Shown piece by piece: positions 3,132-20,786 of a stretch of DNA of 32,000 nt. The DNA is from Wallemia ichthyophaga EXF-994. Lineage: Eukaryota; Fungi; Basidiomycota. The notes below the pieces were generated by a model. That model worked only from the letters and a program-made list of their open reading frames with translations. It made no database searches and was not told the origin of the DNA. The DNA lies in contig NW_008806293.1 in assembly GCF_000400465.1 (NCBI RefSeq), positions 2,601 to 34,600 of the forward strand, in the 5' to 3' direction. Position numbers and translations under genes: made by a program. The stretch's first letter is position 1, and each line of letters starts with the position of its first letter.

Positions 3132-4295
3132 CTAACTTATAGTCCTTTGTATATATTCAAAACTCCTCACGCTCCCTCTAAACCAATCAATAGCCTTCTT
3201 ATCGTCTTCTCTTTTCTCACGCGCTGGTGTTTCCTCAAGAGTAAGCTCCTCTATATTCAATCCGCTCCTCTCTATCAAATTCCTAAGCTTTGAGTAGTCT
3301 GCGTGTCTTGTTCGCAGTACTCGCAGTCCTCTACCGTTGGATACAAGTGCATCGAGGAATCCATCACCTTCTGCTACCACATCTGCCACCTCCAACCTAT
3401 TGAACATTTCCCTATTCATTCTAACCTCCTCCCTTCCAATTCTCAACTTTATCCGCCGCAGGGACGTGAGTGAGTGGTGGATTGTGATACTTTCCTCCAT
3501 ATCCACACTGTCATCCGTATATATCTCCATCTCTTCTAACGCTGGTGCGCGTAGAAATCTCAGTGCGCTACTGCTATTCACCAAGGTTAAAATTTTCAGC
3601 TGGGCCAATGAGATTGGTATGTTTAGAGTGAACGCAAGGTTCCCCACATACAGCGTTTCTAGATCTTTGCACTGTGAGATGGTGTACCCAGCCATCGTAT
3701 CCCTGCATTGTGTATTGAGGTGTAGATGTAAATGTCTCACTCCGTTGCTCAAATCTTGGTCGAAATGCGTCGACCACGGGAGTACATTGTGCAGCCTCAC
3801 CACATCCAGCTGATTCTTCTGTATTATGAGCGCGTGTGGCTTATTGTGGGTGTTCAGAGTGGCTGCCCACGCTTCGACGACTGTGCACTCCGGTGGAACG
3901 AAGAAAGGGCCATTAAAGGTTTCTGTGTAGTGCACTACCAGCTTATCCAGCTTTTGTGCGCCTATCAGAGTACGTATAGCTACTCCAGGTACTTGTGTAG
4001 CGCCTAGCAACAATTTCACCTCCTTAATCTTCTTCTTGTTGCGTGAGCGTATCAATTTTATAAACTCTGCAAATTCACTCCGCATACCTCCCTCACTCAG
4101 ATCTCGCTCGTATATTTCCACCCTCTGCCACAGCCGCGGTATCGATAGAATCATCGCCCGCCAATAGCTACATACTTGTGACGCACGCCGTGTTGCTCCC
4201 CAGTCGTCCCTATCGAAACACGCTTCGAGGACGCTCTCCCATAATTCCAAAGGCAGCTTGCGCCATGTGTTTGAATTGGAGTCTGCCACCGCCAT
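3132..4295 (-). CDS. F-box-like protein with LRR-like C-terminal region (~387 aa, intronless)
   Basis: WRKLPLELWESVLEACF...ASQVCSYWRAMILSIPRLWQRV is an F-box pattern. LxxLxL repeats follow. First ATG is at 4295; the track start at 4310 is GTG. Confidence 0.8.
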   Translation of the reverse strand: MAVADSNSNTWRKLPLELWESVLEACFDRDDWGATRRASQVCSYWRAMILSIPRLWQRVEIYERDLSEGGMRSEFAEFIKLIRSRNKKKIKEVKLLLGATQVPGVAIRTLIGAQKLDKLVVHYTETFNGPFFVPPECTVVEAWAATLNTHNKPHALIIQKNQLDVVRLHNVLPWSTHFDQDLSNGVRHLHLHLNTQCRDTMAGYTISQCKDLETLYVGNLAFTLNIPISLAQLKILTLVNSSSALRFLRAPALEEMEIYTDDSVDMEESITIHHSLTSLRRIKLRIGREEVRMNREMFNRLEVADVVAEGDGFLDALVSNGRGLRVLRTRHADYSKLRNLIERSGLNIEELTLEETPAREKREDDKKAIDWFRGSVRSFEYIQRTIS

Positions 4296-8399: not shown

Positions 8400-9735
8400 T
8401 CAATTAGACAGCGCGTGCATAATGTAAGTCCACGTAGCCAGGCTTATTGCGTTTGTTGGAAATGCCCTGACGAATACCTACCGGGTGTTTATTTAGCCGC
8501 ACGCGCCGCCAGGAACGCGTTCAAACTCACCGTGCTGTACCCTTTGAAGAAGCCGGGGATGCCTCCCGAGGCGTATATCTTCCTGGCCGTGTCGACGACG
8601 CCGTGCAGCTGTGGCTTGTGAAGATCGTCGAACATGAGCCGGCTACCATGTCAGCCTGGTTAGGGCAAGGTGGGTTTCGTGGTACTGCAACTTGGTGCGT
8701 CAGCGTCATCCAGCCCTATCACTTAAGGCACACCAACTTACCTCACTTCTTTATGTTGTCGAATGGTAATGCAGCAGTCCAGAAAAACGTCGCTGCCACC
8801 TGCATCATGTGATGTCAGTAGTGAGATCGGCTGTTTTTGCCATTGTGCCAATTAAGGTGACTCAGGTACGCACACCGCCAGAAATAAAAGATGCAGTCCC
8901 GAGACTGACGGGAGTATCAAGACGAGCGAACTGGCGCATGCAGAGCTGTTTTGGTTGTAAGTTTAGTGTTTGTTGGTGTTTATGACCATGTTTATGACCA
9001 TGTACCGGCCAAAGCGCAATCTCACCTCGAAACCAGAAAATAGAACCGCAAACTGCGATCTGAAGAGCAGAGTGGCTGTGTATCCTCTGTAGAGTCCCTT
9101 CACTCCGTAATGATGGTAAACCTCCCGCGCTATCGGCCACGGACCTGAATACTTGCGGTCGATCTTGTTGCGCTCGAGTTGGTTTTGCAGCCTCACCTTG
9201 ACGAGCTCGGCGGGATGTGCTACTACGCCGTTTGTCCATCCTGCGCCCATACCCGCGAGTGCTTGGCCTGTGAGTGTGAGTGTGAGTGTGAGCGTGAGCG
9301 TGAGCAACGATGGCATGCAGTGGCAAACGCCAACGCCAAACGCCAAAGGTAAAGGTACGCACCTGCATAAGTCAGTCTCCTCTTGTCGGGTGAGTCAGTA
9401 TCTGTGTCCGGTTGACGCTCAGTAAAAAACGCCAAGCGATTCTCAAGCAGGAGCAAGCGGTAATTATGCAGACTGCCCATGAGGAGCGCATCGGAGCATC
9501 CCCAGCTAATAGCAGGAGCGAGGCCGCCTTTGTAAAGCGCGAGTATCTTCTCTTTAGCTAGCGTCTTACGTAGGCAGTCAATAGGACCGCTGAATACACC
9601 CGGTGGCGAACACTGCAGACGTGTCTTGACAGTGTCGAAGGGGTGCCCGACAGCCATCTTGGTCAACCCTGATCCTACACCGGCCATGAAAGAACGCAGC
9701 TCCGATCCTTTATCCGTCGTGGCTGTGCTGCTCAT
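8400..9735 (-). CDS. Mitochondrial carrier (carnitine/basic amino-acid, YMC1-like subgroup), 309 aa; exons 9735-9363, 9267-9026, 8945-8874, 8799-8747, 8642-8531, 8477-8400
   Basis: Three signatures: GHPFDTVKTRLQ, AHPAELVKVRLQ and ALPFDNIKN|RLM (split by intron 4). C-terminal VFVRAFPTNAISL. The spliced length of 930 nt is 310 codons including the stop. Confidence 0.88.
8643..8746 (-). other. Candidate [D5,6] stwintron: internal intron 8741-8685 nested in the donor of external intron 8746-8643
   Basis: Minus strand: AAG AA|GTGAG[GTAAGT...GCTGAC...TTGCAG]TACC...CCCTAAC..GCTGACATGGTAG|C CGG. Removing the bracket gives donor GTGAGT and a 47-nt intron. Confidence 0.7.
9269..9306. repeat. Hexanucleotide (TGTGAG/CGTGAG)n microsatellite in intron 1 of the carrier gene
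   Basis: tgtgagtgtgagtgtgagtgtgagcgtgagcgtgagc is directly visible. Confidence 0.9.
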
Positions 9736-9781
9736 TACGTGTTTCGGCCTTGTGTTTTGTGATTTGCGTTGCGAGAAGACA

Positions 9782-10678
9782 ATGACGACGTCGCCGTCCA
9801 CCTCGAGTGCAATCGTTTTTAAAGAATACAGCGATATATATAACTCGGCAATTGAGCGTGCACGCTTTAGACCAATTTTCGTCCCAGTGCTTAATTCCAT
9901 ACATGGGGATATAGACGAGTTGGCGAGGGTAATGTCTGATGGCGCGGGGGCATATGATGGCGTCGTTGTCACTTCCCAGCGAGCTGTGGAGGCGTGGAAG
10001 TCGGCGGCAGAAGTTGCTCAAAATGCGCCGAGTGCGCCATGTGGAAGCACTCACAGCTATCACACTCAACATTCCCCTCAGTGAGCACATCTGGTGATGC
10101 TCACGCTCGCGCTCATTTGAAGCAGGCTTGAATGGTCCGATTTGCCTTTCTACTCAGTAGGCCCATCCACCAGCCACGCGCTGCGCAGTCTGGGTAAATG
10201 CACTTGCCCACACTTAACTCCTAAATATATAATGGGCGGCGAAGAATCAGGAAATGGAGTAAAATTGGCTGATTACATACTTTCAAATCACAAAGATGGC
10301 AATGACAAAAAGCACAATCGCATTCTTTACCTCGTCGGCGATAAAACGGCTTCGGAGCTCAGCAACATTCTCCAGGATAATGGCGTATTAGTGGATAGAT
10401 TGCAGGTGTACGCCACGAAGCGATTGTCAGTTGAACAATTACAATTTAACATACACAAGGCTAATGCTGGAGATGCCAAGTGGATCATCATTTTCTCGCC
10501 TAGTGGTGCGGATGTGATTATACCTGCTATCAAAGAAATGGAATTGAATGTGAAGGTGGCTTGTATTGGGCCAACTACCTCCAAGTATGTGCAAGAAATA
10601 ATGCAGGTTTGTGTGGATGCAGTGCCTGCTAAACCAGATGCCCAATTGCTGGCAGAGGCGATGAGCAGAGTAGATTGA
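9782..10678 (+). CDS. HEM4: Uroporphyrinogen-III synthase; exons 9782-10080, 10126-10678 (45-nt intron GTGAGC..CAG)
   Basis: YDGVVVTSQRAVEAW, Q|LEWSDLPFYSVGPST, ILYLVGDK, IIIFSPSG and VACIGPTT...AKPDA motifs. Confidence 0.88.
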
Positions 10679-20454: not shown

Positions 20455-20786
20455 TTAAATGCTCCATTCCCAATCAATATAAGTGAAGGGTATTATGCCT
20501 TCAACGCTCTCCAACTCGTAGCTCTCTTTGCTGAAATATTTGAACCTGCGTGCAACCACCCAACCTTCGGTGAACTCTGAGACGATGAAAACAAGTTCGC
20601 CGTGCTTGACGCCCAGCTCCGAATCGTTCTCCGGCTCAAAGTCGTAGAGCATACATTTTATGCAGTTGAGTGTAGAGCCATGTACACCTCGATACCTATC
20701 GTCGTCGGCGTTGTATGCAAAGTCCTTTACGTCTGCGAGTGGTTAGGACACACCGTCTAGCCATACGCACCCAACCTACTCAGCAT
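20455..20786 (-). CDS. NBP2: Small SH3 adaptor, Nbp2/Skb5-like (~94-97 aa); short exon from ATG 20786, intron to acceptor 20733, exon 20732-20455
   Basis: VKDFAYNADDDRYRG resembles the Nbp2 IKDYAY..LHYG motif. The SH3 LYDFEPENDSELGV..GWVVA..GIIPFTY resembles the Nbp2 ALYDFEPENDNEL. The donor is either 20779 (GTAGGT, 47 nt) or 20770 (GTGCGT, 38 nt); both keep the frame. Confidence 0.72.

What the first reader, a model, noticed from the sequence alone, without database searches (positions are those of the whole stretch)
8643..8746. Candidate [D5,6] spliceosomal twin intron (intron inside a splice donor) in a basidiomycete-type mitochondrial carrier gene
Seen (minus strand): exon ...GAC AAC ATA AAG AA | GTGAG + [GTAAGT ...GCTGAC GCACCAAGTTG CAG; 8741-8685, 57 nt] + T ACC...CCCTAAC CAG GCTGAC ATGG TAG (to 8643) | C CGG CTC ATG. 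The 104-nt interval is about twice the local intron size and has two complete donor/branch/acceptor sets. Excising the inner intron fuses GTGAG and T into the consensus donor GTGAGT of a 47-nt intron. Both excisions restore the carrier signature PFDNIKN-RLM. Removing only the inner intron, or using GTAAGT with the distal acceptor, leaves an in-frame TGA (AAG AAG TGA). Known: stwintrons with the inner intron in the donor were described mainly in Ascomycota; I am not aware of one reported at this locus or in this lineage. Inference: obligatory ordered two-step splicing, possibly a regulated NMD-coupled switch for the carrier.
Basis: partly seen in the sequence, partly recalled or inferred. Interest (0 to 1): 0.75.

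Follow-up and report, generated by a model that had tools for sequence, protein, structure and literature searches.

The report
Probable nested twin intron in Wallemia
A 104-base intron in a mitochondrial carrier gene of the salt-loving fungus Wallemia ichthyophaga looks like one small intron sitting inside the start signal of another; relatives keep the same layout, so it is probably the first such "twin intron" seen in a basidiomycete, but no RNA evidence for two-step removal could be obtained.

Summary
The sequence observation is correct. The window is Wallemia ichthyophaga EXF-994. The gene (minus strand, 9735-8400) encodes a 309-aa SLC25 carrier with five introns.

Intron 4 (8746-8643, 104 nt) reads GTGAG + [GTAAGT...GCTGAC...AAG/CAG] + T...GCTGAC...TAG. 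Removing the inner 57 nt (or 51 nt) turns the sub-consensus donor GTGAGG into GTGAGT.

The pattern alone is not beyond chance in one genome. The same architecture is kept in W. hederae (5+49+42) and the W. mellicola complex (5+50+43), although the intron interiors cannot be aligned.

- A complete inner 3' site followed by T arises in only 2-7% of shuffles per lineage.
- None of 30 sampled Wallemia donors has G at +6.
- Neighbouring introns are 42-59 nt.
- Three other long introns of the same gene contain no nested unit.
- Trametes and Tulasnella have one canonical 59-65-nt intron at this exact position.
- An RNA-seq contig confirms the final junction in the W. mellicola complex.

Verdict: a probable [D5,6] stwintron, a known kind (Aspergillus rtnA) in a new phylum. 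The splicing intermediate was not observed, so obligatory order and any NMD switch remain unproven. The reference annotation wrongly splits this gene at the intron.

The parts
8400..9735 (-). Mitochondrial carrier (SLC25, carnitine/acylcarnitine-Ymc-like) gene. Six coding exons: 9735-9363, 9267-9026, 8945-8874, 8799-8747, 8642-8531, 8477-8400 (stop included). Product 309 aa.
   Evidence: Model built. Pfam Mito_carr E=2.3e-50 with 3 repeats. 77% and 74% identical over the full length to the W. mellicola and W. hederae carriers.
8643..8746 (-). Complex intron 4 (104 nt, phase 2, inside the Asn codon of PFDNIK-N-RLM): the candidate [D5,6] stwintron.
   Evidence: The orthologous junction AAGAA^CCGG is seen spliced in RNA-seq contig L005 of a W. 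mellicola-complex species.
8742..8746 (-). GTGAG, the first five bases of the external donor. It reads GTGAGG before inner excision and GTGAGT after.
   Evidence: PWM score 4.0 before versus 9.7 after; the weakest of 30 sampled Wallemia donors scores 5.3.
8736..8741 (-). [quoted passage not shown] Preceded by AG, it forms the full AG|GTAAGT consensus.
   Evidence: Kept as GTGAGT in W. hederae and GTGTGT in W. mellicola/L003, with variation only at the degenerate positions 3-4.
8685..8741 (-). Internal intron, 57 nt (or 8691-8741, 51 nt, if AAG 8693-8691 is the acceptor).
   Evidence: Its size falls in the local modal range of 42-59 nt.
8699..8704 (-). GCTGAC, branch element of the internal intron (branch A at 8700).
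   Evidence: Counterparts are CTTAC/TTAAT (W. hederae), TTGAC (W. mellicola) and CTGAC (L003).
8684..8693 (-). Internal 3' splice region AAG|TTGCAG|T. Both AGs are followed by T (8690 and 8684), and that T becomes +6 of the external donor.
8650..8655 (-). GCTGAC, branch element of the external intron (branch A at 8651).
8643..8645 (-). TAG, acceptor of the external intron.
   Evidence: This is the only acceptor that restores the carrier reading frame.
8743..8745 (-). In-frame TGA reached whenever the external donor is not used. It serves as the stop codon of the 247-aa gene model in the EXF-994 reference annotation.
   Evidence: L007 gene 8901-9893 equals window 9735-8743.
8633..8635 (-). ATG (Met of RLMFDD) used as the start of the spurious 60-aa gene J056_002330 in the reference annotation.

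Best explanation
Intron 4 of the W. ichthyophaga carrier gene is a donor-disrupted spliceosomal twin intron of type [D5,6].

Inferred pathway:
1. By intron definition, U1 binds the consensus AG|GUAAGU at 8741 and U2 binds GCUGAC (branch A at 8700). The 57-nt (or 51-nt) internal intron is cut out at CAG 8685 (or AAG 8691).
2. This joins GUGAG to U and creates the consensus donor GUGAGU of a 47-nt (or 53-nt) external intron.
3. The external intron is removed using GCUGAC (branch A at 8651) and UAG 8643, joining AA^C to give PFDNIK-N-RLM.

The position is an old basidiomycete intron position. In an ancestor of Wallemia, a canonical GTRAGT intron of about 50-65 nt became nested. This happened either by a 5-nt duplication of the donor (W. 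hederae still reads GTGAG-GTGAG-T) plus a new internal 3' site, or by insertion of a whole intron between +5 and +6.

A minor one-step route from GUGAGG, and mis-splicing from GUAAGU to the distal UAG (which gives a premature stop), may coexist.

Shown: the anatomy, its conservation, the ancient position, and the final junction in a sister species. Inferred: the order of the two reactions and that the route is the main one.
For: 1. Every element is present at the stated coordinates, and only full removal gives an open carrier frame.

2. The architecture is kept in three lineages whose intron interiors cannot be aligned:
- W. ichthyophaga: 5+57+42
- W. hederae: 5+49+42
- W. mellicola and L003: 5+50+43
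External units are 47-48 nt in all.

3. The inner donor varies only at its degenerate positions (GTAAGT, GTGAGT, GTGTGT).

4. In composition-matched shuffles, a branch motif, then the first AG 5-22 nt downstream, then T, with both units 42-70 nt, arises in only 2-7% per lineage.

5. In W. mellicola the [D5,6] parse is the only nested parse. The three other long introns of the same gene (95, 80, 74 nt) contain no nested unit, and the lengths of introns 1 and 2 (95 and 80 nt) come from tandem repeats.

6. Among 30 sampled Wallemia donors, +6 is T in 25, A in 3, C in 2 and G in 0. GTGAGG and GTAAGG score below the weakest sampled donor, while the reconstituted donors score at the top.

7. Local introns are 42-59 nt. 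RNA-validated introns in the W. mellicola complex are 44-53 nt, against 98 nt for this one.

8. Trametes (65 nt, GTGAGT) and Tulasnella (59 nt, GTAAGT) have one canonical intron at exactly this position and phase. This is the pattern the literature describes for stwintron emergence (PMC7138796).

9. A second W. ichthyophaga strain carries 4 SNPs inside the intron. None removes a proposed signal; three lie outside all signal motifs and one turns the alternative branch-like CTAAC into CTAAT.

10. The final junction is confirmed in RNA-seq contig L005.
Against: - No splicing intermediate, lariat or read-level data could be examined.
- For a [D5,6] type the uninterrupted outer donor (GTGAGG) differs from consensus only at +6, so a one-step excision is chemically plausible. 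Gene predictors modelled exactly that in W. mellicola and W. hederae.
- Introns of 74-95 nt are spliced in the same gene, so length does not force two steps.
- The donor sample is small (n=30; the 95% upper bound for G at +6 is about 10%) and partly rests on gene models solved from annotation.
- W. ichthyophaga and W. hederae still share similarity over the first ~30 nt of the intron, so they are not fully independent for the donor.
- The W. hederae inner branch (CTTAC/TTAAT) and the W. mellicola inner acceptor (AAG) are sub-consensus.
- The motif alone is not significant in one genome.
Confidence: 0.62

Rival explanations
1. It is an ordinary single intron. The 104 nt are removed in one reaction from the weak donor GUGAGG to UAG 8643, and the inner donor, branch and acceptor are unused look-alikes.
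For: - GTGAGG keeps G1, T2 and G5, which are invariant in all 30 sampled donors.
- Introns of 74-95 nt are spliced in this gene.
- Annotators of W. mellicola and W. hederae predicted a single intron.
- The motif GTRAGGTNNGT is not rarer than chance in the window.
- In Lipomyces starkeyi a related complex intron is removed by either route (PMC7138796).
Against: - A consensus donor 5 nt downstream, together with a good 3' site at the preferred intron length, should out-compete the weak pair and yield premature stop codons. Selection should therefore erase them.
- Instead all of these elements are kept in three lineages with otherwise unalignable interiors. The shuffle probability is 0.02-0.07 per lineage for the 3' part alone.
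- None of 30 donors has G at +6.
- Control long introns show no such look-alikes.
Confidence: 0.2
2. It is a conserved tandem 5' splice site with a regulatory or helper role. Either U1 docks on the downstream consensus GUAAGU and hands cleavage to the upstream GU, or cells switch between the productive GUGAGG site and the unproductive GUAAGU site (frameshift, TGA, decay) to tune carrier level. Either way the whole intron leaves in one step.
For: - The tandem donor is conserved across the genus.
- Using GTAAGT with the distal acceptor gives an immediate TGA.
- Alternative 5' site use is reported in W. ichthyophaga transcriptomes in general (PMC3849046).
- That U1 binding can activate a nearby GU is established knowledge from other systems (own knowledge, not tested here).
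Against: - It does not explain the conserved inner branch, AG and T, nor the constant 47-48-nt external unit.
- It does not explain why the intron is twice the modal length in all species.
- No expression or isoform data for this gene were found.
Confidence: 0.12
3. There are two separate genes, as in the reference annotation: a 247-aa truncated carrier ending at TGA 8745-8743 and a 60-aa protein starting at ATG 8635, with no intron between them.
For: This is how GCA_000400465.1 is annotated.
Against: - A carrier needs three complete repeats. The split cuts the third signature PFDNIK|NRLM in half.
- Orthologues in Wallemia, Trametes, Tulasnella and Austropuccinia are continuous across this point.
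- RNA-seq contig L005 shows the junction spliced in a sister species.
Confidence: 0.02

Closest known systems
[D5,6] stwintron in the reticulon-like gene rtnA (AN5404) of Aspergillus nidulans, conserved across Pezizomycotina (Kavalecz et al. 2019, PMC6616335)
   Same: The layout is identical: the internal U2 intron lies between nucleotides 5 and 6 of the external donor (GUAAG|U). The two units are of similar, normal size (75+76 nt there; 57+47 here). The arrangement is evolutionarily stable across a whole clade.
   Different: - Different gene, phylum and intron position.
- There the intermediate was cloned and sequenced; here it is only predicted.
- There it takes part in exon skipping; nothing of that kind is seen here.
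- The units here are much shorter, matching Wallemia's ~45-60-nt introns.
Complex intervening sequences [D4,5], [D6,7] and [D7,8] in Lipomyces rtn genes, and the 'stwintronisation' model (Ag et al. 2020, PMC7138796)
   Same: - Nested introns at a position that holds a plain canonical intron in relatives.
- Abutting or duplicated donor elements: W. hederae GTGAG-GTGAG-T looks like the 5-nt donor duplication that the model proposes.
- One-step and two-step routes may coexist, as in L. starkeyi.
   Different: - Different split point in the donor.
- Lipomyces species differ from one another in layout, whereas all Wallemia lineages share one layout.
- The Lipomyces cases were verified experimentally.
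[D1,2] stwintrons of Hypoxylaceae/Xylariaceae (PMC9024468, PMC12403724)
   Same: An internal intron disrupts the donor. Occasional mis-splicing from the inner donor to the outer acceptor leaves extra bases in the mRNA.
   Different: - Those are split between G1 and U2, and many are recent sequence-similar copies that spread to new positions with near-terminal inverted repeats.
- This one is a single old locus. It shows no significant RNA structure (z=+1.15), and no second copy of the motif occurs in the window.
Recursive splicing at ratchet points in long Drosophila and vertebrate introns (own knowledge)
   Same: An intron is removed stepwise, and a 5' splice site is regenerated after the first reaction.
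   Different: In recursive splicing the upstream exon is joined to a regenerated donor and the segments abut. Here the first reaction is internal to the intron (nested), the exon is not involved, and the scale is 100 nt rather than kilobases.

Membership tests
[D] stwintron sensu stricto (Flipphi/Fekete/Karaffa definition) | An internal sequence with all three U2 elements (donor, branch element, acceptor) and a viable length | tested here: met
   GTAAGT 8741-8736, GCTGAC 8704-8699, then AAG or CAG; 51 or 57 nt against a local range of 42-59 nt. This is sequence-level evidence only.
[D] stwintron sensu stricto (Flipphi/Fekete/Karaffa definition) | The internal intron lies inside the 6-nt donor of the external intron, and its excision recreates a canonical donor | tested here: met
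   GTGAG|[inner]|T becomes GTGAGT. The same holds in W. hederae (GTGAGT) and W. mellicola/L003 (GTAAGT).
[D] stwintron sensu stricto (Flipphi/Fekete/Karaffa definition) | The external intron has its own branch element and acceptor and a viable length after inner excision | tested here: met
   GCTGAC 8655-8650 and TAG 8645-8643. External unit 47 nt here, and 47 and 48 nt in relatives.
[D] stwintron sensu stricto (Flipphi/Fekete/Karaffa definition) | The mature mRNA joins the exons at the outermost splice sites | tested here: met
   RNA-seq contig L005 shows AAGAA^CCGG in a W. mellicola-complex species. For W. ichthyophaga itself this is supported only by the reading frame and homology.
[D] stwintron sensu stricto (Flipphi/Fekete/Karaffa definition) | A splicing intermediate lacking only the internal intron is detectable | not testable with these tools
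   There is no read-level RNA access. The intermediate junction was not found in metagenome contigs.
[D] stwintron sensu stricto (Flipphi/Fekete/Karaffa definition) | Inner excision is required: the whole sequence cannot be removed correctly in one reaction | tested here: inconclusive
   GTGAGG scores below all 30 sampled donors, and G at +6 was never seen. However, it keeps G1, U2 and G5, so one-step use cannot be excluded.
[D] stwintron sensu stricto (Flipphi/Fekete/Karaffa definition) | Both sets of signals are conserved in orthologues that keep the intron | tested here: met
   Three lineages plus a second strain.
Mitochondrial carrier family (SLC25, Pfam PF00153) | Three tandem Mito_carr repeats, each with a PX[DE]XX[KR]X[KR] signature | tested here: met
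   Pfam reports 3 stretches at E=2.3e-50. The signatures are PFDTVKTR, PAELVKVR and PFDNIKNR in the spliced model. The third exists only if intron 4 is fully removed.

The most novel reading that the evidence does not exclude
The nested intron is an obligatory two-step device that Wallemia uses as a post-transcriptional gate. The ratio of productive two-step splicing to GUAAGU-to-distal-UAG mis-splicing (immediate TGA, then decay) would be modulated, for example by salinity, to set the level of this carrier. That would make it the first functional, regulated stwintron outside Ascomycota.
Probability: 0.06. Interest if true: 0.65.

Novelty: new member of a known kind. Interest (0 to 1): 0.45.

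Why it matters
- **Wider range.** If confirmed by RNA data, this extends spliceosomal twin introns from Ascomycota, the only phylum with validated cases in the literature read here, to Basidiomycota. That would show nested splicing by intron definition is not an ascomycete peculiarity.
- **A clean evolutionary example.** The position is ancient and holds a canonical intron in Agaricomycetes, yet it is nested throughout one genus. W. hederae still reads GTGAG-GTGAG-T, which looks like a 5-nt donor duplication.
- **Practical value now.** The W. ichthyophaga EXF-994 reference splits this carrier into a truncated 247-aa protein and a 60-aa orphan (J056_002330). The two models should be merged. Tandem donors of this kind are likely to break gene predictors elsewhere too.

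Tried and rejected
- **Significance of the motif alone.** One match against 0.42 expected, and for the looser GTNNGGTNNGT 5 against 2.6. Not significant, so the case rests on comparative evidence.
- **RNA evidence for W. ichthyophaga.** The only Logan contig carrying the gene (L006) is genomic. A search with the C-terminal half found only the mis-annotated 60-aa protein. The supplements of the genome paper list no per-gene splicing data and do not contain the locus tag.
- **Intermediate junction in JGI metagenome contigs.** The W. mellicola-type junction gave 0 hits. A degenerate search for further orthologous exon/donor sequences also gave 0 hits.
- **Intron-hosted small RNA as a reason for the size or conservation.** No Rfam match up to E=1. 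Folding energy is no better than shuffles (z=+1.15). Rejected.
- **'Long because of repeats'.** True for introns 1 and 2, but not for the candidate.
- **Second tandem-GT site at 20765-20775 (minus strand).** It lies at the 5' end of an SH3-domain gene. No consistent nested model was found, so it was left aside.
- **Exact mapping of P0001 on L001 and P0016 on L011.** My script failed on both. The relevant regions were read directly instead.
Full report
**What is in the window.**
The window is identical over 18,635 bases to scaffold KE007243.1 of Wallemia ichthyophaga EXF-994 (Basidiomycota, Wallemiomycotina). On the minus strand, from ATG 9735 to the stop ending at 8400, I built a six-exon model. 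It translates into a 309-aa protein with three Mito_carr repeats (Pfam E=2.3e-50). The protein is 77% identical to the W. mellicola carrier and 74% to the W. hederae carrier over its full length. More distant hits are named SLC25A20/29-like or Ymc-like. The introns are 95, 80, 74, 104 and 53 nt.

**Check of the observation.**
Exon 4 ends AAG AA at 8747. The layout that follows is:
- GTGAG (8746-8742)
- GTAAGT (8741-8736)
- GCTGAC (8704-8699)
- AAG (8693-8691)
- CAG (8687-8685)
- T (8684)
- CTAAC (8663-8659)
- GCTGAC (8655-8650)
- TAG (8645-8643)

Exon 5 starts C CGG CTC ATG. Only full removal restores PFDNIKNRLM. Retention, inner-only removal, and GTAAGT joined to the distal TAG all read AAG AAG TGA. 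GTGAGG joined to the proximal CAG also runs into stops.

The 'twice the local intron size' claim is wrong against this gene's other introns. It is right against the neighbourhood, where 11 introns in flanking genes are 42-59 nt, and against the published genome mean of 61 bp. Tandem repeats lengthen introns 1 and 2: (CTCACA)6 and a GGCGTT-type repeat in intron 1, and a 12-nt duplication in intron 2. The candidate has no repeat.

The bare motif GTRAGGTNNGT is not significant in one genome, with one match against 0.42 expected.

**Relatives.**
I fetched the orthologous loci of W. mellicola CBS 633.66 (L001) and W. hederae (L002). I also fetched genomic contigs (L003, L004) and an RNA-seq contig (L005) of a W. 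mellicola-complex species, and a second W. ichthyophaga strain (L006). The intron sits at the same position in all of them and has the same anatomy:

| Lineage | Total (nt) | Layout | Split |
|---|---|---|---|
| W. ichthyophaga | 104 | GTGAG + [GTAAGT...GCTGAC...AAG/CAG] + T...GCTGAC...TAG | 5+57+42 (or 5+51+48) |
| W. hederae | 96 | GTGAG + [GTGAGT...CTTAC...CAG] + T...ACTAAC...CAG | 5+49+42 |
| W. mellicola | 98 | GTAAG + [GTGTGT...TTGAC...AAG] + T...CTAAT/CTCAC...AAG | 5+50+43 |
| L003 | 98 | as W. mellicola, but with inner branch CTGAC | 5+50+43 |

The inner donor varies only at its degenerate third and fourth positions. The external unit is 47-48 nt in every lineage. Beyond the first ~30 nt, which W. 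ichthyophaga and W. hederae share, the interiors cannot be aligned.

The second W. ichthyophaga strain differs at 11 positions in 3,164 nt. Four of these fall inside the 104-nt intron, and none removes a proposed signal. One of the four lies in the alternative branch-like CTAAC and turns it into CTAAT.

**How unlikely is that?**
I shuffled the interior of each intron, keeping its composition. I then asked how often a branch-like motif is followed, 5-22 nt later, by its first AG and then a T, with both units between 42 and 70 nt. This happened in 2-7% of shuffles per lineage.

That test fails to refute in two further lineages.

As a real-sequence control, the three other long introns of the same gene contain no internal donor-branch-acceptor unit at all. 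In W. mellicola the [D5,6] parse is the only nested parse possible.

**Donor strength and intron size.**
I assembled 30 Wallemia donors from three sources: gene spans and product lengths in the annotations, exact protein mapping, and alignment of RNA contig to genome. G1, T2 and G5 are invariant. Position +6 is T in 25, A in 3, C in 2 and G in none.

With a small-sample weight matrix, GTGAGG scores 4.0 and GTAAGG 2.5. Both fall below the weakest sampled donor (5.3). The regenerated GTGAGT and GTAAGT score 9.7 and 8.1, and the inner donors score 7.1-9.7.

In the W. mellicola complex, six RNA-validated canonical introns are 44-53 nt against 98 nt for this one. A seventh canonical intron, of 43 nt, is retained in the same RNA contig.

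**Age of the position.**
An intron in the same phase, in the same Asn codon after DN[IV]K, is present in:
- Trametes cingulata (65 nt, GTGAGT)
- Tulasnella sp. (59 nt, GTAAGT)
- Austropuccinia psidii (170 nt)

It is absent in Calocera, Mixia and Kockovaella. So a canonical intron at an old basidiomycete position became nested in the Wallemia lineage.

W. hederae reads GTGAG-GTGAG-T, a perfect 5-nt tandem copy of the donor. That is the event proposed in the 'stwintronisation' model (PMC7138796). Insertion of a whole intron between +5 and +6 is an equally possible origin.

**RNA evidence.**
The RNA-seq contig L005 shows the final junction AAGAA^CCGG. The outermost splice sites are therefore right in a sister species.

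No data on the intermediate could be obtained:
- The only other contig of the species is genomic.
- Metagenome scans found nothing.
- The genome paper's supplements carry no per-gene splicing table.

No small RNA or stable fold explains the intron.

**Interpretation.**
The best reading is a [D5,6] stwintron:
1. The consensus inner donor pairs with the nearest 3' site, at the genus-typical intron length, and is removed first.
2. The regenerated GUGAGU then drives removal of the 47-nt remainder.

I give this 0.62. The main rival (0.20) is one-step removal from the weak GUGAGG donor, with the inner signals unused. It is hard to square with conservation of a stronger competing donor and a complete competing 3' site, both of which would produce stop-containing mRNAs.

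A conserved tandem donor acting as a U1 docking site or as an unproductive-splicing switch (0.12) explains the donor but not the inner 3' site or the doubled length.

The annotated two-gene model is refuted (0.02). 'Obligatory order' and 'NMD switch' remain speculation.

**Comparison with the known.**
Stwintrons have been validated only in Ascomycota. Almost all are [D1,2] (PMC12403724). A [D5,6] case is established for rtnA of Aspergillus nidulans and Pezizomycotina, with a sequenced intermediate (PMC6616335). Lipomyces carries [D4,5], [D6,7] and [D7,8] forms, described as the first outside Pezizomycotina (PMC7138796). I found no report from Basidiomycota.

This is therefore a new member of a known kind in a new phylum. 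It meets every sequence-level criterion. The experimental criterion is untested, and the 'one step impossible' criterion is inconclusive.

**Side result.**
The EXF-994 reference annotation breaks the gene exactly here. It has a 247-aa model ending at TGA 8745-8743 and a 60-aa 'hypothetical protein' J056_002330 starting at ATG 8635. The two should be merged.

Noticed in passing
window 8400-9735 (minus); L007 8901-9893 and 10001-10236: The W. ichthyophaga EXF-994 reference annotation splits this carrier into a 247-aa gene (stop at TGA 8745-8743) and a 60-aa hypothetical protein J056_002330 (start at ATG 8635). The break falls exactly at the complex intron. The merged 309-aa model is continuous with all orthologues.
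   Followed up: yes
window 9269-9304, 9324-9347 (intron 1) and 8977-9003 (intron 2): The two longest other introns of the gene are lengthened by tandem repeats. Intron 1 holds (CTCACA)x6, which makes a run of branch-like CTCAC motifs, plus a GGCGTT-type repeat. Intron 2 holds a 12-nt unit x2.2.
   Followed up: partly
L006 versus window 10557-7394: A second W. ichthyophaga strain (Logan SRR25393958) is 99.65% identical. Four of its 11 differences lie inside the 104-nt intron, about 3.8% against 0.2% elsewhere. One of them creates a second CTGAC upstream of the inner branch site.
   Followed up: partly
L005 1513-1555 (RNA-seq contig SRR23314750): The transcript-derived contig of a W. mellicola-complex species retains a canonical 43-nt intron (GTGAGT...ACTAAG...CAG, after SSFE), while the 98-nt complex intron is fully removed. 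The contig also fuses neighbouring genes on both strands, which reflects the very compact genome.
   Followed up: partly
L012 1537-1706 (Austropuccinia psidii orthologue): The intron at the same position is 170 nt, and its annotated donor GTAAAC lacks the otherwise invariant G5. It may be mis-annotated or may be a complex intron itself.
   Followed up: no
L002 3089-3262 and around 3505-3560 (W. hederae P0002 model): The W. hederae gene model looks wrong in two places. It has an extra 'IR' in PFDTIRIKTRL, with 40-56-nt mini-introns around it, and a non-homologous stretch TTSVGGFRSRMDKVGGKYFMYTLLIHSS where relatives have GQALAGMGAGWTNGVV.
   Followed up: no
L003 938-1062 versus window 9362-9268: Intron positions differ within the genus. 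The W. mellicola complex has an extra 44-nt phase-2 intron after GWTN, which leaves a 37-nt exon. W. ichthyophaga has no intron there.
   Followed up: partly
window 20765-20775 (minus): A second abutting GT pair, GTTGG-GTGCGT, sits just after a possible ATG at the 5' end of an SH3-domain gene. The 38/43-nt candidates did not give a clean model.
   Followed up: partly
window 9736-9782; L007 8854-8901: The divergent HEM4 (uroporphyrinogen-III synthase) gene starts only about 46 bp upstream of the carrier ATG, so the two genes share a tiny bidirectional promoter region.
   Followed up: no
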